A DNA stretch of 64,000 nt, from positions 628,272 through 692,271 of the forward strand of contig NW_002060958.1 of the NCBI RefSeq assembly GCF_000150275.1. The letters run 5' to 3'. Within the stretch, counting starts at the first letter, position 1. Every line of letters begins with the position of its first letter. Source of the stretch: Trichoplax adhaerens (taxonomy: Eukaryota; Animalia; Placozoa). The notes under the pieces are model-generated. The model was given only the letters and a program-made list of their open reading frames with translations. It made no database searches and was not told the DNA's origin. Below are positions 4,872-64,000 of this stretch, one piece after another. Made by a program: the position numbers and the translations under genes.

Positions 4872-4921
4872 NNNNNNNNNNNNNNNNNNNNNNNNNNNNN
4901 NNNNNNNNNNNNNNNNNNNNN
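4872..4921. other. Assembly gap (50 N)
   Basis: Run of N characters. Confidence 0.99.
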
Positions 4922-39202: not shown

Positions 39203-40139
39203 GAAAAACAGTTTACTCAGTATAATGTAGAGTGTAGATCTATCGTATCTATTTTCTAAATCGATCGTATTCATTTGAATAACGTTCATGATCTAAATTG
39301 ATTGCTTCTAAGCAGAACTTAGTAAGAGACAATGGAATGCAACGTAATATTACTTCATTTAGATCAATGCAATCCATATTCAGAATCGACTGCCTGCTTC
39401 CAAAAGTACTGGTCATAATGAAGTGTTGGACACAATTTATTGACAAAGTAGGCCCAATGTCTGTCCGTCCAAAGAAGTTGCAAGTCCATGGATTCTTTCT
39501 AGTACATCGATCGAGTTAGCTAGTTCATCAATTAAGTCGCAAGTTTCCAATGTGGAGCGAAATGTTGAGCGAATAGGCCCAATGGAGGTTTATTCGATAA
39601 TTAGAGCAACCCTACTGATTGATCATCCAATTTAATCTCGTACAAGCAGGCGGATCATGAGCATTAGACCTTCGAATTTACACGCACTTGATCCAAGCAA
39701 CCGTACTATTCGTATTCTCCCCCAAGAATTTGACCCCTAATATAAGGCTTATTGTTCTTGGTTGAAAGTTCATGCATTGTGCTCAAACAGGGGGCCCTGT
39801 TTACACGACTATATTCGACAAAGATTGTGGCATTGAATAGAAGAAGTAAGGCATAAAAAAATCAGAATACGTACATTGGGACAAAATTGGGCATATTGAC
39901 CATCTATCATTTGCTTTAGGGTCGGCGAATTGAGCGACGGTGTTTAAATTAGGCTGTGTTGTACCATCCCATTATTCAGGAAAGATAGAAATATTGGAAA
40001 TGTGAGCTGGAGCCCAACTTTGATTTGTGATTGGCTTGGTGGATATTATTATTTTTTACAATCGCAAAATTAATATTGAATTTGAAGCCTTATTATCAGT
40101 TTCATTGGAAGGAGTAATTAGGAGATTGTGAGTGTTAAA

Positions 40140-43100
40140 ATGGACACAGAAGTCAATTTTGGGTCATCGTCAGATGATGAAATGAAAGAACAGAAAACTG
40201 AGCGTAGAGGCTCTCAGTTACCACCAGATCAACGTTTTGGTTGCTTTAATTTTCACCCAAATTGGTTACAAGTATTTAACCATCATTTATGTTTGGCATT
40301 CTGGATTGGTATTTGTCAACTTTTTTATGGTTTTATCACCACTGGTTATGATGCAAGTATAGTTTCCACTATACAGAAAGGATTTGGTTTGAGTAGTGCT
40401 GATATTGGTGGCACAACGGTCTGCTATAGCATAGCGCAGTCAGTATTCGGTATCATTATATCACATAAAGCGGCACATTCTCATAAAGGAAAATGGCTTG
40501 GTTTAACTGGACTCATCACTGCCGCTGGATGCATCGTTTATATTTTGCCTCATCTTGTAACTCCCAGTTACAGCACTTTAGATTCATATCAGCTTTACGA
40601 CAATCAATCTGATTTTTGCTTGGAACATAATAGGTCGATTCCTAATGTCTGTCAGCAACAGAATATAAGCAAAGGAGTATACCTTTTTATTTTCTGTATT
40701 GGTCAATTTGTCTTGGGTGCCGGTACGTCTATTCTCGCTACAGTCGGTTGGTCTTATTTAGATGAAAGCGTTAGCCCAGATATATCTCCAGTATTTACTG
40801 GTATCAATGTAAGTATAATCGGATTAAGTACTGCTTTTGGCTTTGCTTTTGGAGGGACGGCTTTGGATTTATACGTCTATTGGCCTTTTAGAAAGCCAGG
40901 TAAGACACCGTAATCACATTCAATGTAGTTGAATGTTGTTGATATAATTAAGCAATAAGTGCAGAAATTTCTTACAATGTTATGTTAGAACTGTTACGTT
41001 AGGATTTAAAAACAGAAAATATTCAATATTCGAGATAGTACTGAAACACTACAACAGTATTACCAACTGCTAATGTAAGATTAGCTAGCCCATAAACCTA
41101 TTTAAAAAGTAGACCCTTGGCATAAATATGATCATTATACGCGTACATCATTGCCACTATGTACTGTGGTATTACAGCATTGAACGAATTAAGGATGGCA
41201 TGGATGAAAATATTAAGCTTCTTCAATTAAATTCTACCTTAGAAATGGTAGCAACTTCTTAATTTAAGATCCCAAGTCCTCATTCTTTATCGAGCTAGAC
41301 TTTGTAGGCTATATATGATTCCCAATTAAGTTTTAATACCATCCATGGTAGAGTAATATTAGCGGTTATGCAGCGTAAATTAAAATAAAATATATTTTTG
41401 ATACTCTTCAATCAATATGAAAAAATTACTGTAAATGATACTGATTTATGTTACTTAGGCCCGGGATTGACACCAAATAATCCAAACTGGATTGGTGCTT
41501 GGTGGCTTGGTTACGTCCTTACCGGTATATGTGTGGCAATAGGTTCGATACCAATGTTCGCTTTTCCTCGCCATTTGCCAAATTATGAACTGTATAAGAA
41601 ACAACGTAAAGAGCAGGCTATTGGTAAATCAAGCGTTGATAAACAGTATGGCACAAATCTGAAAGAAATTATACCAGCATGTAAAGAGTTGTTATGCAAT
41701 TTACCCTATGTATGCACTACATTAAGTCTAGTAGGGCATCTTATAGTGCTAGCTGGTATGGGAACATTCCTTCCAAAGTATTTGGAAGCACAGTACGGAA
41801 TAAGTGCAGCCGATGCGAGTATGTATTCTGGCCTAATAATCGTTATAGGAATGCTGCTTGGAGTTATACTGGTATGTTAATTGATGGTCTTAATGCTAGT
41901 TAGTAGAAATTGCCGAGCTAGTTTGTTCTGTAGTTAAAGATACAGTATTAAGAGAATAAGCTCATTTAACGATTAAGCATCTTACACATTATCTTGATTA
42001 ATACAATTTTGTGTAGTTTTTGAACATCAGAAAATTGAATCGATTTGCAAATCATTTTCTATAACTATGTTGCTATACGTTTATACACTCAGGTAGGGAT
42101 ACTCCTGAAGAAAAAGAAATTAGGCGTTTTAATGTTGGCAAAATATAACTGGATGGCTTGTTGTTTAAGTATACTGACTGCATTCGCGTTTATCATTACG
42201 AGATGTCCAAGTACAGCTATTGCTGGAGTAAATGTTTCTTATTTCAAGTAATTGCTAAATAATAGAAAGAGCACTGTAACTAAAAGTTTTATATCATTTT
42301 AATTATTTTTACTATTAGTTTAAGATGAAATAGTGCGAATTTATTTTAAATAACAAGCATGGATGCATATTTGCGAAATTACATTAACAATTAGCCGTAA
42401 AATTAAGTTATCTTGGCATAATCTCGTTTATTAATTTGCTATCATAACCCTGTTTAGTGATACTTCCGCTAAAGGCACTAATCACCTGGCCTATAATCTG
42501 AGTATTGAATGTAATCTTGGCTGTCACTGTAGCACCGATAATTTTAAACCAGTATGCGATCAAAGAACTGGAATAACATACTTTTCGCCTTGTTATGCCG
42601 GTTGTTTATCTGGCAATGATAGCATAGCAAAAGAGGAGGTCAGTTAAATAAAATCAACTAATAAGGTTATGGTAAATCAACGAATTAATAGCATTTTTAA
42701 GATATGCATCAAAACTTAGCAATTGCTTCATTATATAAGCTTGAAAGCAGCCGTTCCCTAATTATTTTTGTTATATTTTAGATCTTTTACAATTGTAGTT
42801 GTCTAAGTGGTTGGAATTTAATGAACAACAGCGACGCAATTTCTCAACATGTTATAATGAATTATTGTCCGAAGCCCTGCAATGCCTTAATTCCATTTTT
42901 AATTTTAGGGACTTTATTTGCTTTTCTAGTCTTCTGCACACTAATACCTTCATTTCAAATTATCTTTCGGTAAGTTAAAATTAATGCGAGATGATGTCAT
43001 CATCATAGTGTAATCCTGATATAATTAAAATATTATCTGAACTATAAGGATACATAATCTCATGCTAATTAAAGTAATATCAATTTAGCTGCGTCCCAGA

Positions 43101-43500
43101 GAGCCAACGTTCACTTGCTCTAGCTATAGAGAAGGCAATTATCTTGGTTTTAGCGACTACGCCAGGTCCTATTATAATGGGTGCATTTATTGATAGCGCC
43201 TGTAATTTATGGAAAGAAGACTGTGGTGAAAGAAAGTTCTGTTGGATATATGACAGTCATTCCTTGGCATTAGCTATAACTGGTGTTCTTGCAATTATGA
43301 AAGTGTTCTCAACGATCTTTTCCTTTCTAACATATTACTTCATGAAACGTGATATTGAACGATATGAAGTAGGAGATGAACAGACGATTATAAATGAAAA
43401 CTTGAGTAGTGCAAGTAAAGATGATCAATCCTTTCATGAGCATCCTTTACTACAACCTGAAGATATTTCCAATGATTTAGAGAAATCAGTGGTATTTTAA
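40140..43500 (+). CDS. SLCO/OATP family transporter, copy 2 (6 exons, ~702 aa)
   Basis: Exons 40140-40899, 41459-41871, 42093-42247, 42458-42638, 42782-42969, 43089-43500. All introns GT-AG, total 2109 nt in frame. Same OATP motifs. First five coding exons equal copy 1 in length. Confidence 0.93.
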
Positions 43501-45572: not shown

Positions 45573-48500
45573 CTAGTCTTCTACAGTATTGACAAACGTA
45601 ACAAGTTGCATTGAAAGCACGCTAGATTTAGTTACAGCTTGTGATGAGAATGCCGATTTTGATGGCTTGGTCTTTTTGGATAAAAAAGTTCTTTTGAGTA
45701 CTTTAATGCTAGTCAAAGTGTAGAGGAAAGGATTTATAGCAGAATTTAGAGGCAGTGTAAATGTAGCAATAAATTGTAATGTAATTGTGTCAACTTTGCC
45801 TTCTAGTATGAGCCCAGAAATAGTAATATAAAGATACGGTAGCCAAGAAATTAAATCACTTATTAATATTAACGACAAACGTATCGCCAATATTTTGTTA
45901 TCGTTTAGAGATGACTTTCGTATTCCCTTACTACTTTGTTGTACTGCCATGAAGATGCGAGTATATAAGGCAATCATTATTATCCACACTATAACTGTTA
46001 TTGACAAATATGAAATCATCCATGTCGCATTAAATATACCGCGATAATTATTTGGCATGCACATACTATTATAGGCGTAGATCCTAAGATGTCCCGGCTG
46101 ATTTATACTAAACATAACTGGAATGCTAGAGAACGAGATAATTACTAGCCATACCAGTCCAAGAGTGATTCTAGCAACTTTCAGAGATAAATTAGCAGTA
46201 GAGAAAGGATAAGCAATGCAAATAAATCTATCAACACTAATGATAGCCATAATAAGAACCGACATTAGTGTTGATATTATTACTAGAAGGCAAGCGATAT
46301 GACAACCAGGATTCGATAGCCAATTTTCGGAATGTAATCCAAAATCACCATCAGAATAAATTAAATTTGCTATCCCAATAGTTAATAGATAAATAGACAT
46401 AATAAGATCTGATATTGCTAGATTACTTATGAGAAACGTTGGTACAAGATTGCTCTTGATTGACTTTGAATAGTGATTTTGTAATAAAACTATAATGTTC
46501 CCAATTAAAGCTAACGATCCAACTATCCAAACAAAAGCATCCAGAGATGCATGAGCTAATAAATAACTGCAAGACGAAAGGGTATCGGCAAACATACTTG
46601 GTTGGCAAGTCTTAACTTTACCAGGAACCATACAACAAAGATAATCTCGCCCAGATAGCCTAAAACAATAATATCGAATTTTTTGATTGCTTGTATGCCA
46701 AGCTTAGTTGATATTAGTAGTGCTTATGTCTATTTAAACTGATTGAATATTAAATTGAACTTACACCGTAGATAGATCGGGTGGTCCAAAAAAGGATGTC
46801 TGTGTAACGAAAGCTAAGCTATTACCTTGTACGTATCTAAAATAGCAATAGAGTTAATTATGTTAACATGCAAGATAATAGAGTAACTTCGAGTCTACAT
46901 GTTTTATTTTAATTTGCTGCATAAAAATAAGAAAATATTTGTTAACGTATAATTTGTAATAAGAGTGCTTACAAAAATTTTATTCTCAGTAAACCTCTAA
47001 AACACCGGTTATGAATAACGATTATCTCATTATTTCTAATATCCCTACCACGAAAAAATCAGAGACGGTCAGAAATATTACCGGTATTAAAAATCTGCAA
47101 TTTACTTATTAGCTTTTAATTTATTACAAAGTTTCGATGAATGGAAAATAAGTTCCTAGTTTTTGTTCACAAATATTGGAAATTTTGTTATTCGAAATAT
47201 TTCTAAAAGCGATAGTTGAAGATTATAATAATTTAGTACCATATATAAGCAGCTGTCTCAAAACAGCTTTGCAACAAGATAACGTAATGTACGATCAATA
47301 TGTCAATTCTTTGAACCACGTATCAAGCAACGATTTCTGCACTATCTGGAACACTTTTGCTCTACTAGAAGACTACACAAAGACTTAGACGCCTCGTATT
47401 TTAAGTTAAACACTACGTTTCAAAAATTAACTTATTACACGATATATTGTGTTTATATACTCTTCTTCAACAGTTCATGAGTCATAGTTAATACGATTAA
47501 CTTTAGTATCATTCACTGAATTAGACATTAATTTTAGCTACTGCTCTCGAATGTAGACCACAGTATCTACGAACAGAATATCTAATGGCTAATACTGAAT
47601 AGTCAGATTACGATATGTCCTATCACGGAATATTTCTACGATAATTTACAATCTACCATAAGTAAGTTACAATCACTATGATTCGAACTGTAAGTAAATA
47701 CCTCGTATTCCCTAATATAACTATTAATTTAGTATATGTATATATGTCACTGTCATATAAAGTCAGTGCTATATTAAAACACAGTATGTAAAAATTAGAA
47801 GTTAACTAAATAAGGATAGGCTAACAAAATTATCCTAGCATAGATATTTCTACTCTAATACAGTATATAACACCGTCACAGAAGCATTCTAAGCATCGTA
47901 CCTATGGAAAACTAAAGCATAAACTACACTAAATCGTTTAAGTAATTAAATACTGATTCATTTGCCATTAAATTATGAATCACGTTAATTTTTGACACTT
48001 ACAGACTCTTCAACGCATAAAGCTGTAGCTCTGTAGAGAATGTTAGATTGTAGAGTCTATTTCCTGCAATATGGCTTTCAAAAAAACGAAACGGAATAAT
48101 TCATAATTAAATTATTTCTAAGGTTTAATTCAGCGTATACCATAATGATTAATTGTAGGTAATTTAACAGGAGTTTAACTTATCTAGAATTCCTTTGTTG
48201 AATTTTGAAATTTTTAACAAGAGCTAATGCGTAAGCTATTTCGGAATATAGAGAACTTACAGCGCCTCGAGATTCTTGTAACTGTCCGCAGCAAGGTTTG
48301 CAATATCGATTGATCCTAGGTTATTATTGCTGATATCTCTATTGTTATTGTCACGCAATATAATGAATACAATAAGCATGCATATATGCAAAATTTAGCA
48401 TTATAAATTATTGTAACTAGTGCATAAAGTATATGAAGCATTAACATACAAATATTGTAAAGATGAATACAAGCGGAAAGCATTTTGAGGGATGTCAGTA

Positions 48501-51500
48501 ATTGCGCAATTTCTCATTTTGCTGAAATGTAATTATTTTGAAGGTAGTAGTTAATAAGGAGTGTCTCAAGATACTCGGACTTTAAAATTTATAATACGAA
48601 AGTAATTAATAGATATATTTTAGTCTTATAGCCAAAACTATTGATGTTTAGTATTGAATGCGTTACTAATTTTAAAGTGGTAGAATTTTGGTGCAATTGA
48701 TTGCCAGCCAACTCAAAAGGGTGAAGCTTATTCAACTATTTATAGCTTTAATAAAAGTAACTAATTAAAAATTAAGCTACATTTTGCATTCATAGAGCTA
48801 TTTTGGCATAGTAGTCTGTCTTTTCAACTGTCAGCATAAGTACAAGAAATGGGAAATTCTACTATTCATGTCGTTATTCAGGTCAAGCAAAGGATGTAAA
48901 GCTTACAATGCTGTTATGTAAATTACTGTTCGTCTTCTCAGAATTCCTTTGATATTTTGCAGTCTTATAGGATTGTCACTAATATCCCTAGAAGTATTTA
49001 ATAGGAGTATAGATAATATTTTATAGTAGTAATCATCCATTGCCATTTTTTGTTGTGTGCATAGGGATAGATTTACTGTTAAGGATTTCTAATTCAGATC
49101 ACAAAAGAGGTTATAGCTACCGAATGGATATCTTAATTTATTGTTTTACGTAATGGCAAATGGAATCCTTACAGGCTTCGAAAAAAATACGGATCAATAT
49201 CGGTAGATAGTTTCTTAACGTTATTTCCAGCTATGTTTCTATCAAAAAATAAATTTGCGATGATCCAATGGAATTTTGCTTAAAATTTTCAGAGATAATG
49301 TGGACTTACATTTCATATATTGTGTGGAGGTGATTCAAAAGCTTTTTACCAATGTCTACACCATTTTTTATCAAATTGTTGTAACTTGCATTTCTGGAAG
49401 TAAGGGGAATGCAAAAACTGTATTGCTGACCAGTATGATTAATTTTTATTAAAGTACTTTAAGTAACATAGTAATAATACTTACATGTGGCTTAATCTTT
49501 CGAATATTAATTGGCAATTTGATTCGATGTGGGAAATATTATTGTTATCAAAGATACTATAATAGAGTAAAATTTATATTCTTGGATAGCACGTAAAAGT
49601 ATGGGTACATTTTTATCGATTTCTGTAGTGTAAATATATAATTTAAAATATTTTTGCTGAAAGTTTTCAATACTGCTATTCATGATTTTTAAGTTAGGAC
49701 TGATGATATGATATTAAACTATATAAGAAATATTACGAACAAGACACTTAAAGGTGACAGCCCCTCGCAAGAAAGATTGCTAATAATATTGTTTCCAATG
49801 TCTCTGTTTAGAGGTAAAATAATAATTTAAAAGTTCACTTAAGTTTTTTTGCATAATATTTGTTACAGTTTCTGAAATCTATAGCTTACAGGTTTTTTAT
49901 CTTGGTGTGTTTCATATTTCCAATGGCGGATAGACGATTATTACGAATATTTCTAAATAAAAAAAGTTGACTTATTCGCTAACGTATATTTATCTAATAC
50001 TTTTTCCTTTTCCCGTAGGAATTCGGTAATTACAGTAGCAAACCGTATGACAAGAAATCTTATATTTCTTACAGGCTTATTAATTTGGTATTATTAAATC
50101 GTAATGCATTCCATGAATCGATGTGATTACCCTCCAAGGATCTAATATAGACATAAAAATGCAGCTATAATTTCTTAAGTTTTTGTCCACTGTAGTATAG
50201 AAATAGGAGAAACCTAGTAAGCATTTGTTGTATAAAAGTTTCAGAGTAGAAAAAGTCACTTTCGATTTGAATCCATTAGTTAGGATTGTAACATTATTAT
50301 AGTAATAGATTATCATAAAGGCATCGCCATAGTATAATCTACTGCTTACGATTAGTAAGTATGTTCTCGCAGCCCGTTTCAAACAGTATAAAAACTTACA
50401 GATTTGTTAAGGAACTTATTCCATCAAAGGTACTCTTTACCGATCGAATTCGGTTATTGTCTAGATATCTAGACAAATAAGGTGTGATATTTAGTTTTCG
50501 ATGTTACTTACTATTAAAATTTTTGATAGACCTATACACATAAAATATTAGAAGGAATCTTACAGAGTGTTTAATCTAGTATTTGCAAAATAATTTTCCT
50601 CTAAATACTGGATTTTATTGTTACCAAGATACCTAGAATTACGGATTAAAATCAATTCTGTAATTTGGGAATAACGAATCTATTAGCTGCTGATGACTGG
50701 TGTATATTTTAATTTTTACATGCTTACAATTCAGTGAGTAGAGATAAATTTCTGAAATTTTTAAGGTCCAAAACTTGGATATCATTTCCGGCTAGATTTC
50801 TGGTTTTCGTTATTAAGGCAATTAATTATTTTTTATCATTTGTAAGCTACCTTTTTTACTTAATCGTTTACCAGTGTATAGATCATGCGAATCTTTTCGT
50901 AACTATCAACATTTTCAAGGTCTAAAACTTATCTTACACCCAGTAAATATTATGAAAATAAAATTATAAAAATTATAATATTTGTTAGGATTATTCAGAT
51001 AAAATTATTTAGACTTATTCTGGAGATTTTTTACTAATATTGCAGCATCAGTAGTGCATTAAAACTTTAACTGCTTAACAAACCCTATTAGTCTGGCTTA
51101 ATTTAGATGATGTAACATGATATTGTACACGTTTGTGTACGAAGTTCGCTGTATTGGCGAAATGCCTAGTCAGTTCGTAAACGGCAAAAATACCAAAATA
51201 CGTAAATTAGAGAAACCGTCTTCCTTTATAAATCAGAGAAACTATCTTTATTCATGCAGTAATGTTACTAAAAAGACAGAGATTCTCTGTCCTTTTGATG
51301 ATTATAATAATAATAATAATAGATTAATTCAAATAATCAATAATATATATATGAAACTTGCACTAACTGAAGTAATAGCCAAACATTTAGAGCTACTATT
51401 ATCAATTAAGCAGTTATTATTGACCTCATATGCTCTCAAAACATGAAATGATTCAATAAATAGAAATTTTGAAAGCTGTTGATAATCTGCAAATTTTATA

Positions 51501-54500
51501 ATTATCGTTAATTCGCAACGAGCTTAAACGATCAGAAAATATCACCGATTAGTGAATTATAGATATTAGCCGTCGGCTGTGATGGATAAAGTACAATTAG
51601 CCTTTACCGAACTTAATTCTGTGGTACTAGAGAATTAATGCTATTTCAGTTAACTAACTATAGAAACTAGGTACGCTATGCTATGATCGTAAAGATTGGC
51701 GTGAAATTAAGTGATGTTTTTAGCTACTGTATAGATTTCTATTTCTAGTCCTTAATTTCAACATTATCCAATAGTATTGTTACTTGTACGCTATATATTG
51801 ACTATCAGATTTGGTCTTATGTTAATTTATACATTGTTTTAGATTAATGCCACATATATATTTACTTGTTAAAGTAAACGGGCTAGGGTTTGGATTTGTT
51901 ACATAACTATTTAGGATAGAAATATTTAATCTAAATTATATCTACTCGGACTTACAGAAAACTTAGACTTATTAATGGTTGCAAAAAGGTCAAGTCTTTT
52001 AGGTGATTTCCACGTAAGTCTCTATACGTATAAAAATCAAGAGAATTTCAATTTCTTAATTTACTTTAATAAATAATTTCTAAGAACGAAACTAAACATT
52101 TGTAGAAATTTCTATATTGTTTCATTGTCTGTACGTGAATAGGTACTCTTACAGTTTCCTGAGACTTTTTAAATTAGCCATAGTCAGATCATGAACACTA
52201 TTCAAACGATTATTACGTAGAAATCTGAAATTGGAATATTGACGTTAATATATTTTAATAAAGTTCAAAGGCTCATGTTAGTAGATTTATTGTTGTAGAA
52301 TAGGATTCTAAAGAATCATTTAAAAGATAGCAAAACTTACGATGATTTATAGGTATAACTTATCTAGTTAAATATTATTTACATTAGGCAGTGGATAAAT
52401 TAGAATCTCTATACTTACAGTTCTTGCATTTTTATTGGATGATTTAGTGTAACAAAAAAATTTGCATCAATGGTATGATATCTATTCCAACCTAAATGAC
52501 TGATATTCATTGGCAATTTTATTTACCAATTCTAGTAAAATAATTGTTTAAATTGCGATTCTGATACAGGCTGACTTACAGTGATTCTAGCGATGGTACA
52601 CCATTAAAATTGAGCGGAGGGGATTCTTGCAAGTAGTTATGTGTTATTTTCCTATTATTAGTTAGTCGTAGTGTTAGTAATAGGAGACATTCAATAAATA
52701 GATGCTCAATTCATTGACAAGCTTTTAGTAGGTAATACTTTAGACAATTTAATACATATTTAAGATTTCATTTGCAGCTGCTAAAGTATTGCTATAAATT
52801 TATAAATTTTATTTCTAATTAAGCAGATTTATTTGAAAAATAAATTTAGCGTATGCCTTACAAAGTTTTGCAATCGTAAAATTGCAGGTTCGGATTTTCA
52901 CTTATTTGATTATATGATAAATCTCTAAACAATAAAAGTAAATTTAAATGTAGAAATATTGTATTTGTATTCTATAGTATTGTATCGAATATCGTATAAG
53001 TTGCCATCGTTTTATATGTTTGAGAGCATATACTATTATTGCAATTCGCATCATAAATAGTTTTCTGTAATGTACAAAGATTTTAAAACTAGCGTTTTAA
53101 TTATCAGAAGTAGATTTCTCTCCGTGAATTTCATTCTAAACTAAAATTTTATCACCGAAGACAAATGGTAAAAAATGTAATATTTCATTATTTCAAACGT
53201 TCTATCTAAGCCTACAGTTATTGGTACAATTCTAATTATATAAAACTAATATTAAGGTAACTGCGATCCAAAATTTTAATTCTAGGTAAAGTTACGTAAT
53301 TGCATCAGGTTATTAGAATTATTGCTTCCCAGCAAAGTACAAATTTTATTTTTTACCTAATCCCTGTAACACAATGATTAATAGTTTATCCCTAAAATAG
53401 TGACCCAAATTTATACTTATACGATCAAGTTTAACTTACAGCTCGGCAAGCGTTTGGTTTCCATTGAAAATATCAGGACCGCTAAGTCTTCTGATATTTG
53501 TCTTTTCTAATCCTCTGTTAACAAATGTTGCATTTTGAGTAAAATCTGAGGCTTATGATGGACTTTACAGATTTTTGAGTTGCCCCTTAGCTTTTAAAAG
53601 TGCATATCCGTACATTACAGTGTAACTTTCACTAGTAAGCCGTAATATACTGTCAAAAAATAGCTTATCTAGGAATGTAGTAGTGATGATTTATCCATGA
53701 TATTTTACGTAATTTTAATAGAGAATGGCATACCTCAGTACCAAAAATTAATGTTTACTTAGATTTACTATAAATACTGTCGATTTATCAACAGCGTTTA
53801 AGTTCAAATTTGTCTAAAGAGAGACGTATTATTCGCTGTAATTTCCTGAATATAAGAATGTTATTGCTATTTAGAGTCGTACTATAGATAAATAATGAAC
53901 AAAATGGGGCTGATATCAGGCTCGTAAAGTTTAATATTTTCGTTATAAATTTCGGTTTGTAACTATGACATTCCAATGTATTTGTGAATAAGGAATTACT
54001 AGATCTAGTGCTAAATATAACGATCAGAGAAGCGTAGAGGCCGTAAGTTTAATAATATTTAGTATTAATTAACTGATACAAATTAAGCTTAATGCAGGAA
54101 AATAATGGATTTCATAAATTAGGAGCAATATATAAACCTTAAGTTATCTATTTTTGTGTTTTTCAAAGAGATAAAATTTACTTACAAAACGCTTAGTGTA
54201 ACATTTGCCGAAAATATTAAGCCATTGAACCTGGATAAGTGATTTCCTGCTAATTTCCTTAGTATTGTTAGACAATAATTGATTATTACTTTATATAAAA
54301 TACGCTTTAGTCTTTACATGATTTCTAGCTGACAAATTAATACAAATATTTGACTACTCATTTCATCCATTACTATCGTGTATACTGGTACATATTTGCG
54401 CAATATTGTTCTTTAATGAATCTAACGTATCTAATGTGGTCGATTTCTTACAGATCAGATGGTAGTTAATAGCAATGTTAATGATTCTTTGTTGTTTGAA

Positions 54501-57500
54501 CTACTATTCCGAGTGTAGAAGAATTTAAGAAAATATACTATTGAGAGTACTTACAGTGTAGCAAGTTTTGCTAGTTTGGTAAAGGCGACTGGGCTAATTG
54601 TGGATATCTGATTACTTTCTAAAGATCTAAAATTGAGATTTAAGGCACATCTTGATTATAAGATTATTGTTTGATGGAATAGGTTATTAGTTAAGAAAAC
54701 TATGCTAGCTTTAAATTAGGATAGTTCCTAGTGAGATATCAGTATGTATTTCTATCTGTTCCACTTGCTCCTAATTAAGAATCGTAAGGCCTGATAAAAA
54801 TATTGACATTTCTATCTACGAAGCCTATTAATTTTTTAACTAACTGTTGGTGCTATAGGCTTACCAAGAGAACATCTTATTATCCTATCTGATAACTACT
54901 GCTAAACCTTAAACTAAAATCTTATATTACCGCTTTATTGTTTAGAAACGAATGTTAATCGTCTGCCGAGTGCAGCTGTAGTTTGAAATATGATTTACGT
55001 ACACATACAAATATAGCGATTATACGCTAAAGTAGAAGAATTACTAGAATTTGTATTGTTTTACTAAAGTGTTTCACCCAGAATTTAGTCGTAATTTAGT
55101 TAATCATCCATCTGAGATTTCATGAGAAGGTGAACATTTACATTTATAATTAGCGTTTAAAAAAAAGATTGAATAACAGAAATAATATAATTGACTTTAT
55201 ATAAGCGAAATGATAAGATATCCCTACAAGGTATGCAAATCCTTCATTTTCTCAAAATCTTGACTTCCAATAGAGCTGATGATATTCTCGTCTAGTTTTC
55301 TAACAGATTAATTGATGTGATTGAATTACACTTACTTAAAATTTTGTTTTACGAAGGCGGAAGAGCTTAGTATTCAATTCTTTAATGTAGATTTTATAGA
55401 AATTGTAATAAAAAGTATCTAACTAATCTATCTAACAGGAAATAATTTAATTGTCTCTAAAAAAGTTGTCCAAGTCAAGATAAAGTTAAAAGTGATCTTC
55501 ATTACGATGTTCTAAAATACTGTAGAGACAAGAATCTGAAATGAGGTATTCTAAACTGGCATGAAACAGGTTTCTATCATACTCCTTAAATATCCCATTT
55601 TAGCTTAATTTATAACAGTAATGAATTCATCTATAATAATATTTAAATCTGATTCACTAACTTACTCAAATAGATGATATGATCAAAATATTTTACTGTA
55701 TGAATCCTTTTACCTAAGATGTAAATACTCTTGTATTACAATCTAATTACATAAGATTTTGGGCACCACCTGAATTATAGAGTATGACATTATGTTTAAC
55801 GTACACCTTATTTTGCTTAGATGTTCGACTGTAATTGGTAAGTATCATCAACCAATAAGTATAAGAAATCAACACTTTCTAATATTAGCAACCTAATTAT
55901 ATCAGATATTACTTCTAAAATAATCATGCATAGTATGCATCTCTAAAAGTATGCAGTAATATAGTTAAAAATTTAAAATAGATTGAAAACTTACAGCAAC
56001 TGTATAGAAGTTAAATTGTAGAATAAACTTAAATCAAATATTAGATTATCGACCAGTCTCCTAAAGTTACATAAGAAAGGCGTGTTTTAGGAAACAGATT
56101 CGATATACAAAGTTGGTATTGTTGTTTCAACTACTAGCATAATAGTAAGTTTTTAAAATAAGATCGAAGGTTTCGCAAGAAATTTCACAGCAGTAATTTT
56201 AAACTTTCTCGTTGCTTGTAAATACATGACGCCAAGATAAACGTGTTAAATTAAAAAATGACGTGCAGTTTAATAAAATTTTATGAATGATATAAGTGTA
56301 CACATATTATGTATATTCTAGTCATATTTTACATTTCTGGTTCTTTATACATACAGTTCTCGCAAATTTCGCAGATTCCGAAATACATTATCTGAAATGT
56401 TGCTGATACTGTTTGAACTCAAGTGACTAGAGGAAATAAATTATGCGTGGATCAGCTATTAACTATAAATATATGCATTACTTGAGAATTAATTAGTGGA
56501 GAGTCGCATAATATCATTATGGTATATAATCTCTTTTAAATCCTGTCAACATATCAATATAATGATAAACTTCAGAAAACTCTACTTCATTAGCGACTGG
56601 ACGCAATTGATACTATTCTTAAAATACATCGTTATATAAAAGCATCATACTGACTGCTGTAAAAAAATCCACTATTCTGCCAATTTAATAACTTACAGCT
56701 CTTGTAAAATAACAAGATCCTCAAATGCACCGACCATGATGTTGTTTATTTCGTTTAGATTCAGATTTCTAACATGATTTATATTTACATAAATAATAAT
56801 TTGTAGCAATCTCTAAAGGTGATATTCGTAGAGAGCTAAATGCCGTGGTTATTTTTGCTAATGCAATTAAGTAAAGCGACTACTGCTTGGATTTAAATTA
56901 GTCAAATAGCTCTATAGGTAGGCAAAAGTTCATAACAGTACAATAGGTTTTGTGGTTTATCTAAGTTAAAACTGTATTTTTCTTAACAGCTTTACAGCTA
57001 CATTAGAACGAGCTACTATGACCAGATTATATTTGCTAGCATGCATTAATTTCTGCATCGTATTGCAGGCAGGCAAATACTAATTTTGACTTTGCTTGAA
57101 AGTAGAAGTTTGCCCAAATTATACATTTCATACGGCTATTGTAAATTTATTTATAAGGTATCAAAATGATATGAAGGACTTACAGAGTCAGCAATTTTTT
57201 TAAACAACTAAGCATCGATTCTGATATATTTTGCAGTTTGTTTTGATCTAGATATCTAAAAAAATAGACAAGAGTATATTGACGTTTACTCTGGTATTTT
57301 TCATTGATACAGGTGCCTCATTTCTAGGAGTATTGCATATTTGTAGATTCGGTAGTGCGGTATCAAAGTCCAAAGTTATTTATTAAGTATTCTAGATTAT
57401 AACTTACAAACGTTTTAGCTTCAATAGCGTACAAAATGAACGAGGAGCAATATCTTGCATGTTATTATAGCTGAGTTGGCTAAGAAGTGAAAATATGATA

Positions 57501-60500
57501 TACAGAAACTATATTTAGAAAGGTTTTCCACTGTATGTAGTCATAGGTTTACTGTAAGTATCGTGTAATATGATAAGTTTTTATTTCTACCATAGGCGTT
57601 AATAAAATTGTCTGGATACTAAAAAATTGACCAGCATGTTAAAAGACAAGGCTAATGTTTGCTTACAGCTTAAAGAGTTTGCCTAGGCATGCAAAAGTTT
57701 TATTAGTAATCTTAGTCAGTAGATTTCCGGTAAGATCTCTATTAATCAACATATTAGTATCAGCAATGAAAATTAATGAACGAATTAATGAACGAATTAA
57801 TGCATATTGTTACTTTACTATTTCGGTGTTATAACCGAAATTTAAAACGAGGAACTAGAACTATCTAGGCCGACCATGCGATTCAAATTTATTGGCTTAT
57901 GGGCTCTAGGTTATCTATGCTTTAGCTAGTTAGATAATGATTATATAAACAGGGATATAGAAACTAAGCTGTAATTTATGCAAGTATCCGAACATATAAA
58001 TTCATTAGTAAAGTATGATCAGTAAATTCCAGGTAAAACTATCTATAGACAAATACTGTATGTTACGTTTAGAGTATAAAAGTAATTTTATAGCAAGTAA
58101 CTTTAAAAGTAGTTTAGGTTAGCATTTTGTAAAATAAGTGAAATTAACCATAGCAAAGAATCTCACACTTACAATGCAGTTAGGCTCATGGTTTCACAAA
58201 ACGAATTATTTTCTATGTCTTGGATGGCGTTATGACTTAAATTTCTTTAATCATTCAATAAAAGTTGGTTTAGGTAAGTGTTCAGTACAATTATATGCTG
58301 TAAATTAAGGAGACTTGTTCTCCAACAAAATTTCCGTAATCATTTAAACTGAGCACGTGTAGCTGCTACTATCTTTTAGCATTTTCGGATTTTGCATTAA
58401 ATGAGAGCGAATAAAATATGTAATTTCCAACAAGGAAATTTTATTATAAATTTGCTTAATAGGGAATTAGCGTAGGTATTTCGGCTATTGTCTACCTGTC
58501 ACGGTACGAACTACCGTGAAGAAATAGCTATCTAAATTTGGTTAATATAATATAGTGATAATATATTACAACTAGTTACTTAAAATAGGAATTACTCTAA
58601 TTATAAATGTGTTACAGTAAATTTAATGCTGTGCTGTAATGTGCACTGAAATGATTCTGTGAATGGACATATTGTAGTCTGACTGTGAAAAATTAGTTAG
58701 TAGATGTTCTCACCTAAGTATTTTTATAAGATGACTCATGATTGTTAGTTGCTGTAGAAGGGTATATAAACCCATCAGATAGTTGAATAAAGTAGTTCTC
58801 AATTGTCTAGTTGAGTTTAACGAATCAAAGGCGTCTAAATTCTTGTGAGTAGGGATACTGAATCCCGGAGACTACAGTAATTTAGAAATTTATTTTACGT
58901 TATCCTTGTCACGAAGCTGGTTTGTGACACTACCCTAATAAAGAGGTGCCAAGTACATCCGCAGTGTTAATGCACAGTAAGCATTCATAATTCATAACTG
59001 TCTACAGTATAAACAGTAACAATAGCAAATTTAGTTACAATATGACATCAGTCTTCATAAGATACCATTGAATTGGTTTCTAACTAATAATAAAGTATCT
59101 AAATGTAAATGTGGAATTTGAATAGTTATGACGCAAAGATATTACGTAAAGAATGGATCTTGAACACCTAACATTTATTTGGTTGATGATTTACTGTATG
59201 AAAATTAAAAAGTGACGGTTACTACTGAATCGATTTTTAATTAGGTGCATCTTTCTAGTAAAATTTTCGAAACATACCCTAAGTATTAAATTAATTTTTA
59301 TACTCGTATTAATTTATGAAGTTTATCTTACAATTTTTGAAGGTTATTTAAACAATTTAATCCATTTCTGTTAATCTTCCTGAACTTGTTAGAGTCCAAA
59401 TCTCTATAGTCCAATGGAGTGTTAGCAAGAAATACCAATAATTTGTAAGTAACATTCGTAACTTTGGAAAGCCTTATAAACTTATCAATTAACAGTGTAG
59501 TGCCAAGTCAGGGATTTCTCTAAGCAAATTTATGAACCCCAAAATCTTTCATAATGTTAAGGTTAATCAATTTTACTACTTTTGTATTTAGCGACTTCAC
59601 ATTTATGAAGTAACCTTAATTTTGAAGCTCACAACGCTAACTTGACTGGCTTGCTTTCATTGCAATTAGCAATTTTTAGTAAAAATAGCAAAGTCTGGAG
59701 TCTATTATTTTCACTTACAGAAGGGAAAGTGAAGGCATGTCGCAAAATGCCGATGGCGCTATTTCTTTGATTAAATTCTGGCTTAAAATCCTGTGTACGA
59801 GATATTATAGATTTTTTAATTTGGTTTCTTATAGGAAAGATAGTAAAGGTTACACTAGAAAATTCTCCTTCTCTACACTTAATTTATCCTTTAATTTAGT
59901 GGTTACTAGTAGAATTAAATTACGACCATAAATATTAATGGAACTTTCAGAACGTTATTTTATATTAAATCGCTTTATAAAAGATACTTTCGTATTAAAT
60001 TTTTGAATAAAGATTGCCGAAATAGATAATTTTAAGTCATCATACACGAAAGTATCAAAACATAAAATTATGGATACTGTTTAAATTATGTTGAGAATAA
60101 TACATAGAATTCATTCTCTATCATTATCTAAATTTGATTAATTCTATTTTAGATATAATCATTATACTGTAACATTTCAAATGCTAACAGAATTAAATAG
60201 TATCAAACAGGCTGAAGATCGGTGCAAATGAAGCTTACAGGCGATCAGTTTTCGGGAGACAATGAAAAGAATATTTATCAATTTTAGTGAGAAGATTCCG
60301 GTCGAGATGTCTAATTTCCTCAGAAATAAATTATTTTTCAAAGAATATGACGTACTAATATTAGCAATCTTTTGAGTCATTAATGTTATTATTTAAATGT
60401 AACTTACAATGCTTGTAAATTGGTTGCGCCACAAAAAGCTCTTGCTTCAATATCTTCTATATCATTTTTCCTTAAATATCTGTAAAAATTCAATACGTCG

Positions 60501-63232
60501 TAGTGATAATCGAATTAAAGATGGTCGAACTAAATTACCAAAAGATTTAATAGGTGATGGATAGACTCTAGACTGAAAAATTCATAAAAATTTAGAAAAC
60601 TTCTTTAAATATTTGACGGAAAAGGAGTACTGTAGCTACTCCGATCGATCTAGGATGTCATAACATATCGGCTACAATAACACGCAGCTACAGGTAATAC
60701 TATACAACTGTAAGTAGATGATAGCTATTGCAAATTTCTCCGGAATAGTATGCTGTGCAATCCACTTGTGTGCTACAGTTAACGAGATGAGTCTTCCTGT
60801 TAGCTGTTAAGCAAAATGCGCATGCTATCCTAATCTAGCTATAGTATCAATTTAAGAAACGTTAGTGAAATTACTAAAGTTGTTCAGTACGTTTTGCCGT
60901 TAACGAATGAATTTAAGGAAAACTAGAATAGGTGCAATGACAGATAGCACCTTATACACAAATTAGAGCTATCTTGTGAGATAATGTGGCCTCTAATTTA
61001 GAAGAAGAGACTTTAAACATGACTATGTGTACGATTAATGCTATTGATAATATTAGTTTCAGACTACAGCAGACATAAATTTTCTTATCATAAATATCCT
61101 GGTGATGTTGCTATCAATTATGAATTAATATACTGTTGTTTGACTAATGAAGTAACATAATATAAGGAATAAATGTTTTGATATCTTACTGAATTTTTAG
61201 CTTACAAAGTGCTTAGTGTCTTAAGGCAGCTTATAGATCCTCTAGTAAGATTGGTAATGTGATTTCCTGATAAAACCCTAAAATGAAACATTTTAGGTTA
61301 ACAAATTATAAAACTGGCGCTAATTTCCAAAGTTTATATAAAATTAAAAATTTATTTATTGCCTATACGGAGAAGCATTACGCATCCTCCTTTAGCTCTA
61401 ACATGATGCAACTAGAAAAATTTTAGAAACAATTGCTATTTCCTGCTTCAATATGTTTCTTAGTCTTTGCAACTTGTTAGGCACTACTGGATAATACTCG
61501 TATTTTACGAGTTCATCAACTATTGGCAGTATTATATGTACACATTTCGGCAGATCTCTTCAATTTCTAGCAGAACAGCCACGGCATTTATGCAAATACA
61601 CTATTTTCTGGCTATAGAACTGAAAATTTCTTAACCAAAAATATGAGCTACACTTGTTTACTTATCATCACTATTTATGGTAACTCACAGCGACACTGAT
61701 TGTAATCAACGACATTCTAGCAAATCATTGTAATTCTTTAAGAATTATAATCTGTAAGAAACGTAATGCTAAATATAGCCGATAATCTATAATTCAAATT
61801 AGCTATACCATATATTAGTAGTATTGTGATAAAATCCGATCTTGAAAATTCCAAAGTTGTAGAATATTAGAACTTTATTAGATCTAATACAAAGACTAGC
61901 TACACACAGCCATACTCTAGCCGAGTACAACTACTCTAAAAGACTTTTAGAAAGAACAATCAGATAATCTAATGTCTTATGCATTTATGCTCTCTGTAGT
62001 CTTCGCAGCTACAATCAGCATAGAAGCATTCTACCATATTCTACGTATATTCAGCTTAATACTAGTCACAATATTTTACAGCGATCCATCATTCATCCAA
62101 TATAGAAATGATTACAGCATTTTCATAGACATTATTCTTACCACTCAAAGTACGATGAACGAAGCATTTCCTAATATATGAATTACAATTCTATTTCTAC
62201 CTCTACCTCTAACCTTATTAGTAGCTAAACACCTTACTGTATATAATCATCTGTATTCTAGCATAGAGTCTGTTCTTACAGTCTATAATTATGGGCTACT
62301 AAGTATATCATAAGATAAATATAGAAAAGACACTACCGTATATCGTACTAAACATGGCTAATAGTCTACAATCACAATACTAACTTATTTTACAAGTACT
62401 GACTGATGTTATTTGGTTAACTAGTACTTTGATATTTGCAGGTGCACAATAAAGGATAAATTATAAATTATAAGGGCTAAAGTGATACTGAAAGGTACTT
62501 ACAGAAGTTGAAGTTTTCCTAAGCTGCAAAATGACGACGAATCAATCTCTTGTAATCGATTGTTCGATATATGCCTATGAATTAGTGACAAGGTAACTTA
62601 GACTTGGTTTTTAGGAAAGTATTTCCGTAAAGTACCCGTATGCGGTGTTGTTTTATTTTCTATCTCTAGAGTATTTGATTTAAAAGTCAATGCAGGCGAA
62701 GTAATTGTTATAACATATGTAGCTTTGCATAGTTATTAGATATTCAATTAAATATTGTGATTTTCTACGCTGTTTCTACGAATTACCAAATTCGACCAAA
62801 CGTGATAAACCGTATGGCTATGAGATATCATAAGTTGCTATACACTTCTAACGGAATTGAAGGAAAATAGTAAAATTGTTTCCGTTACAGCATATCGCTG
62901 ATAAAAAGTATATTTAACGAATCCCCAGTCATACTGGATAAAACAGACTACCATGTCATCTAAAGTAAAGTTTCAATTTATAAATTTACCGGCTGCTCTA
63001 ATTACTTTGTCAATCCAAAAAATTATGCTAATTCTACTTATTTTTTCCATCCTATTGAAATTTTAATGAAATCTAATCGATAAAACTGAGATTGTTTATA
63101 TGAATTTAACCATAAAGATATTTCTGAATTGCTAGAATAGCGTACTATCGCGCCACTTACAGGTATTTTATGCCGCATCCGTCTCCGAAAACGTTCGACT
63201 TCAAATTTCTGAGAGCATTACTTGATAAGCGT
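45573..63232 (-). CDS. Leucine-rich repeat-containing GPCR (LGR; type C-like hinge and 7TM) with at least 37 LRR exons; 5' end probably outside window
   Basis: Terminal exon 45573-46659 encodes hinge DYLCC-MVPGKVKTCQP...LSSCSYLL and 7TM (NLAISDL, SVDRF, ISWLP, LPLNSAINPFLY). Phase-2 AG/GT-bounded LRR exons: 46765-46836, 46973-47044, 48003-48074, 48261-48338, 48907-48987, 49173-49238, 49310-49393, 49485-49556, 49741-49803, 49890-49952, 50073-50141, 50400-50468, 50564-50632, 50728-50799, 51956-52021, 52153-52224, 52419-52499, 52580-52651, 52862-52924, 53440-53514, 54186-54257, 54555-54626, 55228-55299, 55995-56060, 56355-56426, 56697-56768, 57184-57255, 57408-57479, 57667-57738, 58173-58244, 59332-59403, 59719-59790, 60239-60310, 60408-60479, 61206-61277, 62503-62574, 63161-63232. 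Possible extra exons 53569-53649 and 55751-55828. Each is a multiple of 3, stop-free and fits or approximates xLxxNxIxxIxxxxFxxLxxLxxL. Confidence 0.88.
47254..47880 (-). mobile_element. Solo LTR, family R1, in LGR intron
   Basis: TGTCTCA...CGTCACA, flanks GCAGC/GAAGC (one mismatch), collinear with other R1 copies. Confidence 0.8.
58497..58929 (+). mobile_element. Solo LTR, diverged relative of R1, in LGR intron
   Basis: TGTCAC...GTGACA with perfect TSD CTACC. TATATAAA at ~58763 and AATAAA at 58786. Blocks such as ggacatattgtagtctgac match the reverse complement of R1. Confidence 0.8.
61825..62376. mobile_element. Interspersed repeat family R2, copy 2, in LGR intron
   Basis: Collinear with 11742-12275. 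Inverted termini extend to TAGTATTGTGAT/ATCACAATACTA (61819-62382). Confidence 0.8.
61972..62181 (+). CDS. Putative repeat-encoded small hydrophobic protein (69 aa)
   Basis: ATG-to-TGA ORF whose frame is kept without indels in two other diverged R2 copies, with many synonymous differences. Confidence 0.35.
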   Translation: MSYAFMLSVVFAATISIEAFYHILRIFSLILVTIFYSDPSFIQYRNDYSIFIDIILTTQSTMNEAFPNI

Positions 63233-63824: not shown

Positions 63825-64000
63825 TATTACCGTGTTATACACTGCAATATACACTGTAATATCGAGATTATAGTAGAAACATCTACGTTAGGATAATTTT
63901 GTTGATTTACCCTTATATGAAGAGTTACTAATTTAGATATGTGATATTTAAATATAGCACTAGCTTTTATGGTGATATATATTAACATATACAGCCTACT
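63825..64000 (+). mobile_element. R1 LTR, truncated by window end
   Basis: Reverse complement of the R1 end at 44625-44707 and 21180-21332 (acactgtaatatcgagattatagtagaaacatctacgttaggataattttgttgatttaccc). Confidence 0.85.

What the first reader, a model, noticed from the sequence alone, without database searches (positions are those of the whole stretch)
57184..62574. Strict A/B alternation of Cys-bearing LRR exons: candidate disulfide-stapled two-exon super-repeat
Seen, in transcript order: A HISNNRLQEIDSSSFCSLGKLQLL; B VLSGNHITNLTRGSISCLKTLSTL; A YLRKNDIEDIEARAFCGATNLQAL; B HLDRNLLTKIDKYSFHCLPKTDRL; A ILSQNLIKEIAPSAFCDMPSLSLL; B DLDSNKFRKINRNGLNCLNNLQKL; A NLSHNAIQDIENNSFCETMSLTAL; B DLTGNLLTKITNKTFACLGKLFKL; A QLSYNNMQDIAPRSFCTLLKLKRL; B YLDQNKLQNISESMLSCLKKLLTL. 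Every A has Cys at position 16 (FC) plus an acidic [D/E]I motif. Every B has Cys at position 17 (CL) and tends to be basic. All ten exons are 72 nt. Known: extracellular LRR disulfides usually sit in the N- and C-caps. Inference: five disulfides link adjacent coils on the convex face, and the unit of duplication was an exon pair.
Basis: partly seen in the sequence, partly recalled or inferred. Interest (0 to 1): 0.8.

Follow-up and report, generated by a model that had tools for sequence, protein, structure and literature searches.

The report
Cysteine-paired LRR exon doublets, placozoan receptor
A giant leucine-rich-repeat GPCR gene of the placozoan Trichoplax adhaerens has two alternating types of 72-base exon, each carrying one conserved cysteine; comparison with six sister genes indicates that each exon pair forms a disulfide-stapled double coil, a regular array of a bond so far described only as a single occurrence.

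Summary
All ten exons exist on the minus strand at 57184-62574. Each is 72 nt, phase 1, with AG/GT borders, and each carries one Cys, alternating between position 16 (type A, F-C) and position 17 (type B, x-C-L).

The gene is TRIADDRAFT_60575 of Trichoplax adhaerens, a lineage-specific LGR-type GPCR with about 40 one-exon LRRs, an LRRNT cap, a Cys-rich hinge and a single 7TM exon.

The array runs past the window end. There are seven A-B Cys pairs plus one Cys-less a-b pair.

Six paralogues (7TM 50-62% identical) all have the same in-phase A/B block:
- The cysteines are present together or absent together: 42 both, 11 neither, 2 single.
- Every block starts with A and ends with B.
- A and B stay distinguishable with the Cys columns masked.
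- A-to-B introns are three times shorter than B-to-A introns.

The F-C / F-x-C register matches the disulfide of the decorin LRRCE cap.

So the disulfide-stapled two-exon super-repeat is well supported by comparison but not physically shown: no model coordinates were obtainable. Both public gene models skip two of the B exons.

Each staple is a known kind; the tandem array is a new variant. The scan noted the same pattern on another piece of this genome (s1-742987).

The parts
62503..62574 (-). LRR exon, type A (F-C, Cys at position 16); first of the ten exons of the finding
   Evidence: 72 nt, AG/GTAAG, phase 1
61206..61277 (-). LRR exon, type B (x-C-L, Cys at position 17)
60408..60479 (-). 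LRR exon, type A
60239..60310 (-). LRR exon, type B; skipped in both public gene models (P0123, P0041)
59719..59790 (-). LRR exon, type A
59332..59403 (-). LRR exon, type B; skipped in both public gene models
58173..58244 (-). LRR exon, type A
57667..57738 (-). LRR exon, type B, with an N-K-T sequon at positions 12-14
57408..57479 (-). LRR exon, type A
57184..57255 (-). LRR exon, type B; last Cys-bearing repeat of the block
63161..63232 (-). LRR exon in a B slot without Cys17 (it has an odd Cys at position 19). It is the second half of the Cys-less a-b pair; the a exon lies beyond the window at L004:604-675(-).
   Evidence: this unit is the best match to unit 3 of four paralogues
46765..56768 (-). 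C-terminal part of the LRR array: about 27 further one-repeat exons (63-81 nt, all phase 1) without the A/B cysteines. Includes two other conserved adjacent-repeat Cys pairs near 49485-49556 and 46973-47202.
   Evidence: public models
45573..46659 (-). Single exon encoding the Cys-rich hinge (Y-L-C-C..P..C.P....C) and the whole rhodopsin-type 7TM domain, to the stop codon
   Evidence: ORF; Pfam 7tm_1, E 1.4e-28; acceptor AG at 46661-46660; hinge Cys invariant in 15 homologues

Best explanation
The ten exons are the core of a block of sixteen LRRs (eight two-exon units) in the extracellular domain of a Trichoplax-specific LGR-type GPCR. Two repeat types alternate in each unit. Type A has the consensus x-L-x-x-N-x-I-x-x-I-E-P-N-[SA]-F-C-G-L. 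Type B has x-L-x-G-N-x-L-K-x-I-x-N-x-[TS]-F-A-C-L. The Cys directly after the conserved Phe of an A repeat most likely forms an intramolecular disulfide with the Cys two residues after the Phe of the next repeat (B). This staples the two neighbouring coils on the side of the solenoid away from the beta-sheet. Seven such staples in this gene (five inside the finding, two upstream of the window) would make the N-terminal third of a roughly 40-repeat solenoid a rigid, reduction-sensitive rod. The ligand-facing concave sheet stays free to vary. Shown: exon anatomy, alternation, conservation, joint presence and absence, pairing register, intron periodicity and gene identity. Inferred: the bond itself, its position on the convex side, and the stabilising role.
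For: Anatomy and alternation. Gene identity: 7TM exon with Pfam 7tm_1 E 1.4e-28. Public models are TRIADDRAFT_60575 (P0123) and the Trichoplax sp. H2 'GRL101-like' protein P0041. A canonical four-Cys LRRNT cap exon lies at L004:4637-4754(-), and N-x-S/T sequons are enriched in B repeats (23/53 vs 8/56); both fit an extracellular, oxidising location. Conservation: all six paralogues examined carry the same A-then-B exons in phase after LRRNT and LRR1. Covariation: of 55 scorable units, 42 have both Cys, 11 have neither and 2 have one. The script gave 41/11/3 with Fisher p 7.5e-9; one of its 'single' units is a B repeat with a one-residue insertion read, which I recount as both. In the alternative B-then-A register the association is negative. 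Every block begins with A and ends with B. Cys-less repeats are still A- or B-type (23/25), so they look like paired losses. At least four positions are involved, one of them shared by five genes. Small residues flank the cysteines: Gly after the A Cys in 21/56, Ala before the B Cys in 18/53. Structural precedent: the LRRCE PROSITE pattern has [F]-C in one LRR and [F]-x-C in the next, joined by a disulfide in the decorin and biglycan crystal structures. The same paper describes internal disulfide-bonded LRR pairs without the ear extension, for example in TLR3 (PMC2637281). The AlphaFold2 model of P0123 folds the block as a regular solenoid with block pLDDT mostly 80-94.
Against: No distance could be measured, because the structure tool gives no coordinates and none appear in /data. 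Both public gene models omit the B exons 60239-60310 and 59332-59403; an mRNA spliced that way would leave unpaired cysteines. Two units in paralogues carry a single Cys. This gene also has an extra Cys at position 19 of exon 63161-63232. The unit counts are not phylogenetically independent, since many units are orthologous between paralogues. The signal-peptide exon was not found. The best solved LRR by sequence, IGFALS (7wrq), has Arg/Leu/Gly at these positions, so the fold does not need the cysteines.
Confidence: 0.72

Rival explanations
1. The cysteines are conserved for another purpose: free thiols, metal binding, or intermolecular disulfides (covalent receptor dimers, or tethering of a ligand or matrix partner), rather than A-to-B staples within one chain.
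For: No bond has been observed. This gene's ectodomain has an odd extra Cys (exon 63161-63232). Two paralogue units carry a single Cys.
Against: Joint presence or absence in adjacent A-B slots (42 both, 11 neither, 2 single) and the fixed A-first, B-last borders are what an intramolecular pair predicts. They are not expected for independent thiols. The register equals that of a solved LRR disulfide. The location is extracellular (LRRNT cap).
Confidence: 0.1
2. The staples run in the other register: each B Cys bonds to the A Cys of the following unit.
For: The sequence distance is similar (23 residues instead of 25).
Against: Every block in seven genes starts with A and ends with B, which would leave two unpaired ends. 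Each Cys-less a-b pair would create two more orphans. The association in this register is negative (23 both, 25 single, 0 neither). The LRRCE precedent has F-C first and F-x-C second.
Confidence: 0.03
3. Not all ten exons are in one mRNA. Because every exon is 72 nt and phase 1, some are cassette or decaying exons, so the strict alternation is a property of the DNA and not of the protein.
For: The independent public models of T. adhaerens (P0123) and Trichoplax sp. H2 (P0041) both skip exons 60239-60310 and 59332-59403, as well as other LRR exons. Skipping keeps the reading frame.
Against: Both skipped exons are open, have AG/GTAAG borders and keep the LRR consensus and Cys17. The equivalent B slots are filled in all six paralogues. 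The two models also disagree with each other on other exons, which is typical of ab initio prediction on repeats. No transcript data could be consulted.
Confidence: 0.13
4. Chance, or a neutral quirk of recent exon duplication: the cysteines were simply copied along with the exons.
For: Tandem duplication of an A-B pair would copy both cysteines.
Against: Same-type exons within the gene are only about 47% identical in DNA, so the copies are old. The cysteines are kept in paralogues with 50-62% identical 7TM domains, while the neighbouring positions 16 and 17 of the other type vary freely. Losses come in pairs.
Confidence: 0.02

Closest known systems
Internal disulfide-bonded LRR pairs and the LRRCE C-terminal cap of small leucine-rich proteoglycans (decorin 1XKU, biglycan 2FT3; Park et al. 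2008, PMC2637281)
   Same: One Cys directly follows the conserved Phe of one LRR, and a second Cys lies two residues after the Phe of the next LRR. They are joined by one disulfide that ties two adjacent coils together in an extracellular LRR protein.
   Different: LRRCE is a single, strictly C-terminal cap with a 7-20 residue 'ear' after the first Cys and a longer second repeat, and it is limited to chordates. Here there is no ear (4 residues), both repeats have the standard 24 residues, and the pair is internal and iterated seven times in tandem. Known internal pairs (for example TLR3) are single.
Trichoplax-specific LGRs (41 of 46 T. adhaerens LGRs; Hauser, Koch and Grimmelikhuijzen 2022, PMC9545775); 'GRL101-like' in NCBI names
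   Same: This gene is one of them: rhodopsin-type 7TM, own hinge type, unusually many LRRs.
   Different: The review notes the expansion, the hinge and the high LRR number. The passages retrieved with the terms disulfide and cysteine say nothing about cysteine pairs inside the LRRs or a two-exon periodicity. More distant members (P0042, P0050, P0052, P0053, P0045) lack the A/B cysteines in their available models.
LRR super-repeats: the S-T-T super-motif of TLR7/8/9 and SLRPs (Matsushima et al. 2007, PMC1899181); alternating A/B repeats of ribonuclease inhibitor (my own knowledge)
   Same: Two or three distinct LRR types alternate regularly, which is taken as evidence that the multi-repeat unit was what duplicated.
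   Different: Those super-repeats are defined by repeat length or type, not by a cysteine pair. The many cysteines of ribonuclease inhibitor are reduced and cytosolic, and its repeats have 28/29 residues.
Cysteine ladder of Listeria InlJ (named in papers found; details from my own knowledge)
   Same: A regularly repeated Cys in an LRR solenoid.
   Different: In InlJ the Cys replaces the ladder Asn at the same position of every repeat and is not disulfide-bonded. Here Asn5 is kept (50/56 and 50/53) and the Cys alternates between two positions after the Phe.
IGF-binding protein acid-labile subunit (7wrq), the closest solved LRR by sequence (E 4.9e-79)
   Same: Long run of regular 24-residue 'typical' LRRs with the same L-x-x-N-x-L...F-x-G-L skeleton.
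   Different: It has Arg/Leu/Lys and Gly where the A and B cysteines sit, so there are no staples.

Membership tests
LGR (leucine-rich-repeat-containing GPCR) | Rhodopsin-type seven-transmembrane domain | tested here: met
   Pfam 7tm_1, E 1.4e-28, covering profile positions 1-260 of 260 on the exon 45573-46631
LGR (leucine-rich-repeat-containing GPCR) | Large N-terminal ectodomain of tandem LRRs in the same gene | tested here: met
   About 40 phase-1 LRR exons lie upstream on the same strand. Public models P0123 and P0041 join LRRs to this 7TM domain and carry LRR Pfam families.
LGR (leucine-rich-repeat-containing GPCR) | Cysteine-rich hinge between the last LRR and TM1, and an N-terminal cysteine cap | tested here: met
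   The hinge cysteines C645, C646, C655 and C680 of P0123 are invariant in 15 homologues. The LRRNT motif C-x3-C-x-C-x6-C is at L004:4637-4754(-).
LGR type C (relaxin-receptor / GRL101 type) | LDLa module(s) at the N-terminus and about 9-10 LRRs | tested here: not met
   There are about 40 LRRs. No LDLa family appears among the precomputed Pfam domains of P0123 or P0041. The first exon was not found, so an LDLa module further upstream is not fully excluded. The review places such genes in a Trichoplax-specific clade.
LRRCE capping motif (SLRPs) | First half of the PROSITE pattern: N-x-[ILVF]-x(2)-[VIMFLY]-x(4)-[FIMLV]-C | tested here: met
   Type A consensus N-x-I-x-x-I-x(4)-F-C
LRRCE capping motif (SLRPs) | Ear extension x(7,20) after the first Cys, x(8,9) before [F]-x-C in the second LRR, and a C-terminal position | tested here: not met
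   Only 4 residues separate the A Cys from the next repeat's first Leu, and 7 residues separate L7 from F15 in B. The pairs are internal and N-terminal.
InlJ-type cysteine ladder | Cys replaces the conserved Asn at the same position of successive repeats | tested here: not met
   Asn5 is kept in 50/56 A and 50/53 B repeats. The Cys is at position 16 or 17.
Disulfide-bonded pair (general criterion) | The two cysteines are gained or lost together across homologues | tested here: met
   42 both, 11 neither, 2 single in seven genes; there is no such association in the other register
Disulfide-bonded pair (general criterion) | Sulfur atoms within bonding distance in a structure or confident model | not testable with these tools
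   Structure prediction returned confidence and secondary structure only. No coordinate file is available.

The most novel reading that the evidence does not exclude
The stapled A-B doublet is an autonomous folding module encoded by a compact two-exon cassette (short internal intron, symmetric phase 1, 144 nt). Whole cassettes could then be added, lost or alternatively spliced without breaking frame, repeat register or cysteine parity. On this reading the subfamily uses the cassette to vary the length and reach of a rigid receptor stalk, which would help explain how Trichoplax built dozens of giant LGRs.
Probability: 0.15. Interest if true: 0.7.

Novelty: new variant of a known kind. Interest (0 to 1): 0.52.

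Why it matters
LRR solenoids are usually held by their hydrophobic core and capped by disulfide knots only at the ends. Internal inter-repeat disulfides are described as occasional single events. A conserved tandem series of seven such staples would be a natural example of a covalently zipped LRR rod. Here it is built from two alternating repeat types, mirrored in a two-exon gene periodicity and kept across a gene subfamily. That is of interest for repeat-protein design and for understanding how very long LRR ectodomains (about 40 repeats) stay rigid. It also gives a concrete structural signature for one branch of the unexplained expansion of LGRs in placozoans. Finally, it flags that the public gene models of these genes drop in-frame exons.

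Tried and rejected
(1) Cys-Cys distance in a model. AlphaFold2 was run on the public model P0123 with a 15-sequence alignment. The tool returns no coordinates and none are in /data, so the test could not be done.

Exons were analysed one by one in local scripts, and the public models were used by id. P0123 lacks two B exons.

(3) More distant paralogues.

(4) Search for the pattern elsewhere. None of the other 300 proteins fetched has even one A-then-B pair. These include LGR/GRL101-like proteins of other phyla, chaoptins, Tolls, TLRs and plant LRR kinases. This is a sample, not a census. Full-length paralogue proteins are outside the length window of the word search.

(5) Foldseek against the PDB gave only generic long LRR solenoids such as TLR3, TLR8, SHOC2 and LGR5.

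(6) The best solved sequence relative, IGFALS, has no Cys at these positions.

(7) UPGMA on all 16 own exons, or on all 109 exons, did not split by type (ARI 0). Only the ten-exon set and the nearest-neighbour test did.

(8) The signal-peptide / first exon was not found.

(9) Apparent A-A adjacencies in two paralogues fall on assembly gaps (N runs). In one of them the B exon is visible up to the gap.

(10) Rejected readings: chance, the B-to-A register, an InlJ-type ladder, and LRRCE membership.
Full report
**What is there.** The window is AT-rich eukaryotic DNA (about 30% G+C). It maps to contig C1399:628272-692271 of a 105.6-Mb, 1414-contig assembly. Protein hits name the organism as Trichoplax adhaerens.

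The ten exons lie at:
- 62503-62574
- 61206-61277
- 60408-60479
- 60239-60310
- 59719-59790
- 59332-59403
- 58173-58244
- 57667-57738
- 57408-57479
- 57184-57255

Each is exactly 72 nt, preceded by AG and followed by GTAAG, and is in phase 1 (one base, 23 codons, two bases). Each has exactly one Cys. It alternates between position 16 (F-C, type A) and position 17 (x-C-L, type B).

**The gene.** The exons belong to a much longer minus-strand gene.
- Downstream there are about 27 further one-repeat exons (63-81 nt, all phase 1) down to 46765.
- A single exon at 45573-46659 follows. It encodes a Cys-rich hinge and a complete rhodopsin-type 7TM domain (Pfam 7tm_1, E 1.4e-28).
- Upstream, the array runs past the window end. 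Using the neighbouring sequence (locus L004 = window coordinate minus 64000) I find, all on the minus strand, in transcript order:
  - an LRRNT cap exon at L004:4637-4754, with the classical C-x3-C-x-C-x6-C motif;
  - LRR1 at L004:4349-4420;
  - A at L004:3437-3508 and B at L004:3197-3268;
  - A at L004:1248-1319 and B at L004:1090-1161;
  - a Cys-less A-like exon at L004:604-675.
- Then, inside the window, comes a Cys-less B-slot exon at 63161-63232, followed by the ten exons of the finding.

The block therefore reads AB AB ab AB AB AB AB AB: seven Cys pairs, not five.

The all-against-all protein search with the 7TM exon returned two public models of this gene:
- P0123 = TRIADDRAFT_60575 (740 aa)
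- P0041 = 'GRL101-like' of Trichoplax sp. H2 (1062 aa, 100% identical over the 7TM domain)

Both omit the B exons 60239-60310 and 59332-59403, and each omits several other LRR exons. This is possible without a frameshift because all exons are symmetric.

The genome holds at least 75 related 7TM exons. A review counts 46 T. adhaerens LGRs. Of these, 41 are lineage-specific, with their own hinge and 'an unusually high number' of LRRs (PMC9545775). The passages retrieved from that review with the terms disulfide and cysteine say nothing about cysteines inside the repeats.

Exons were handled one by one in local scripts, and the public models were used by id.

**Are A and B real types?** Three results say yes.
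- Within this gene, with the two Cys codons masked, same-type exons are more alike than different-type exons (nt identity 47.4% vs 44.1%, aa identity 32.5% vs 27.7%; permutation p about 0.002).
- UPGMA of the ten exons splits 9 of 10 by type.
- Pooling seven genes (below), a leave-one-out nearest neighbour with the Cys columns masked assigns 91-92 of about 110 exons to the right type (binomial p about 4e-13).

The family consensus is:
- A: x-L-x-x-N-x-I-x-x-I-E-P-N-[SA]-F-C-G-L
- B: x-L-x-G-N-x-L-K-x-I-x-N-x-[TS]-F-A-C-L

Other A/B differences:
- B is more basic: mean net charge +1.1 against -0.1 (p 0.002).
- B more often carries an N-x-S/T sequon, mostly at positions 12-14: 23/53 against 8/56 (p 0.001).
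The family-wide acidic position is 11.

**Conservation and covariation.** I read 24-40 kb upstream of the 7TM exon of each of the six closest paralogues (7TM 50-62% identical). All six carry the same in-phase A/B block after LRRNT and LRR1.

Apparent A-A adjacencies in two paralogues fall on assembly N runs. In one of them the B exon is visible up to the gap.

Taking units as A slot plus the following B slot, the script counted 41 units with both cysteines, 11 with neither and 3 with one (Fisher p 7.5e-9). One 'single' is a B repeat with a one-residue insertion that shifts its L-A-C-L motif. My recount is 42 both, 11 neither, 2 single.

In the alternative register (B with the next A) the association is negative: 23 both, 25 single, 0 neither. 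Every block starts with A and ends with B.

The Cys-less repeats are still recognisably A- or B-type (23/25), so they look like paired losses. One such pair (unit 3) is the mutual best match in five genes. The others are at different positions, which gives at least four separate paired absences against two single ones.

These counts are not phylogenetically independent and should be read as descriptive. Even so, the pattern is the one expected of a disulfide pair.

Positions 16 of B and 17 of A vary freely but favour small residues next to the Cys: Ala in 18/53 and Gly in 21/56.

More distant members of the clade lack the A/B cysteines in their available models (P0042, P0050, P0052, P0053, P0045). 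None of the other 300 LRR or LGR proteins fetched has even one A-then-B pair. The block is thus a trait of one subfamily.

**The exon pair as a unit.**
- Introns inside a pair (A to B) have a median of 151 nt. Introns between pairs (B to A) have a median of 448 nt (n = 54 and 47 in seven genes; Mann-Whitney p 7.5e-9).
- Arrays differ between paralogues by whole units (7-9 units).
- Same-type exons within the gene are only about 47% identical, and some units are orthologous between paralogues. The duplications therefore predate the paralogue radiation, and no recent pair duplication is visible.

**Geometry.** The direct test was not possible. AlphaFold2 on P0123 gave a regular solenoid with block pLDDT mostly 80-94 across the Cys block, but the tool returns no coordinates. 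Foldseek finds only generic long LRR solenoids.

The best available substitute is a solved precedent. The LRRCE cap of decorin and biglycan is defined by a PROSITE pattern in which one LRR ends ...x(4)-[F]-C and the next has [F]-x-C. The two cysteines form the single disulfide that joins the two last LRRs in the crystal structures 1XKU and 2FT3. The same authors state that related internal disulfide-bonded LRR pairs without the ear extension 'occasionally occur', for example in TLR3 (PMC2637281).

Type A fits the first half of that pattern exactly. Type B has the same F-x-C but one residue fewer before the Phe, and there is no ear. The A-B unit is therefore not an LRRCE motif; it is the internal kind of pair.

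The closest solved LRR by sequence, IGFALS (7wrq, E 4.9e-79), has Arg/Leu/Lys and Gly at these positions. The fold does not require the cysteines; they are an addition.

**Verdict.** The reading as a disulfide-stapled two-exon super-repeat passes the two refutation tests that could be run and agrees with a solved precedent.

Unproven points:
- The bond itself is not shown.
- It is not known whether all exons are present in the mRNA. The public models skip two B exons, and no transcript data were available.

Each staple is a known kind of feature, and LRR super-repeats are known too (PMC1899181). What I did not find described in the papers I searched and read is a conserved tandem array of seven staples with matching two-exon gene periodicity in a placozoan LGR subfamily.

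I rate it a new variant of a known kind, of moderate interest. Another first-stage note of this scan reports the same pattern on another piece of this genome (s1-742987), presumably one of the paralogues.

Noticed in passing
window 46973-47202 and 49485-49556 with the preceding exon; same positions in six paralogues (loci L005-L027): Two more adjacent-repeat Cys pairs in the C-terminal LRRs are conserved in all seven genes. One is ..L-S-C.. (position 12 of a short repeat) followed by ..N-C.. (position 14 of the next). The other is ..I-C.. (position 11) followed by ..R-C-F.. (position 14). They may be further internal disulfide-bonded LRR pairs with a different geometry.
   Followed up: partly
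window 60239-60310 and 59332-59403 (and other LRR exons, e.g. 48003-48074, 47128-47202): The public gene models TRIADDRAFT_60575 (P0123) and its Trichoplax sp. H2 counterpart (P0041) skip in-frame 72-nt LRR exons that have intact frames, canonical splice sites and conserved counterparts in paralogues. The models are probably incomplete, or the exons are cassette exons.
   Followed up: partly
window 63161-63232: The Cys-less B-slot exon carries an odd Cys at position 19 (G-D-G-C-G). The paralogues have no counterpart; it would be an unpaired cysteine.
   Followed up: no
window 63848-63982: A short interspersed repeat of about 134 bp with at least 40 copies at 88-96% identity on many contigs of the genome; MITE- or SINE-like.
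   Followed up: no
L005:2231-3340(-) and upstream (contig C1399:714505-715572): A tandem paralogue (TRIADDRAFT_60578, 7TM 58% identical) lies directly upstream on the same strand. It has an identical block architecture, ABAB..ABABABABAB. Two more paralogues lie on the same contig near 1.16 and 1.19 Mb.
   Followed up: yes
window 6347-7417, 14353-15453, 22275-23219, 28376-29323 (+): Four intronless rhodopsin-type GPCR genes in tandem on the plus strand (Pfam 7tm_1, E 1e-13 to 1e-17).
   Followed up: partly
window 32797-37546 and 40128-43500 (+): Two tandem multi-exon genes of the OATP/SLCO organic-anion transporter family. Pfam OATP E 1.6e-37 was obtained for the first exon of the second gene. 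The first gene is assigned by its visibly similar ORF translation and was not scanned.
   Followed up: partly
window 4872-4921: A 50-base N run (assembly gap). Similar gaps interrupt B exons in two paralogues.
   Followed up: no
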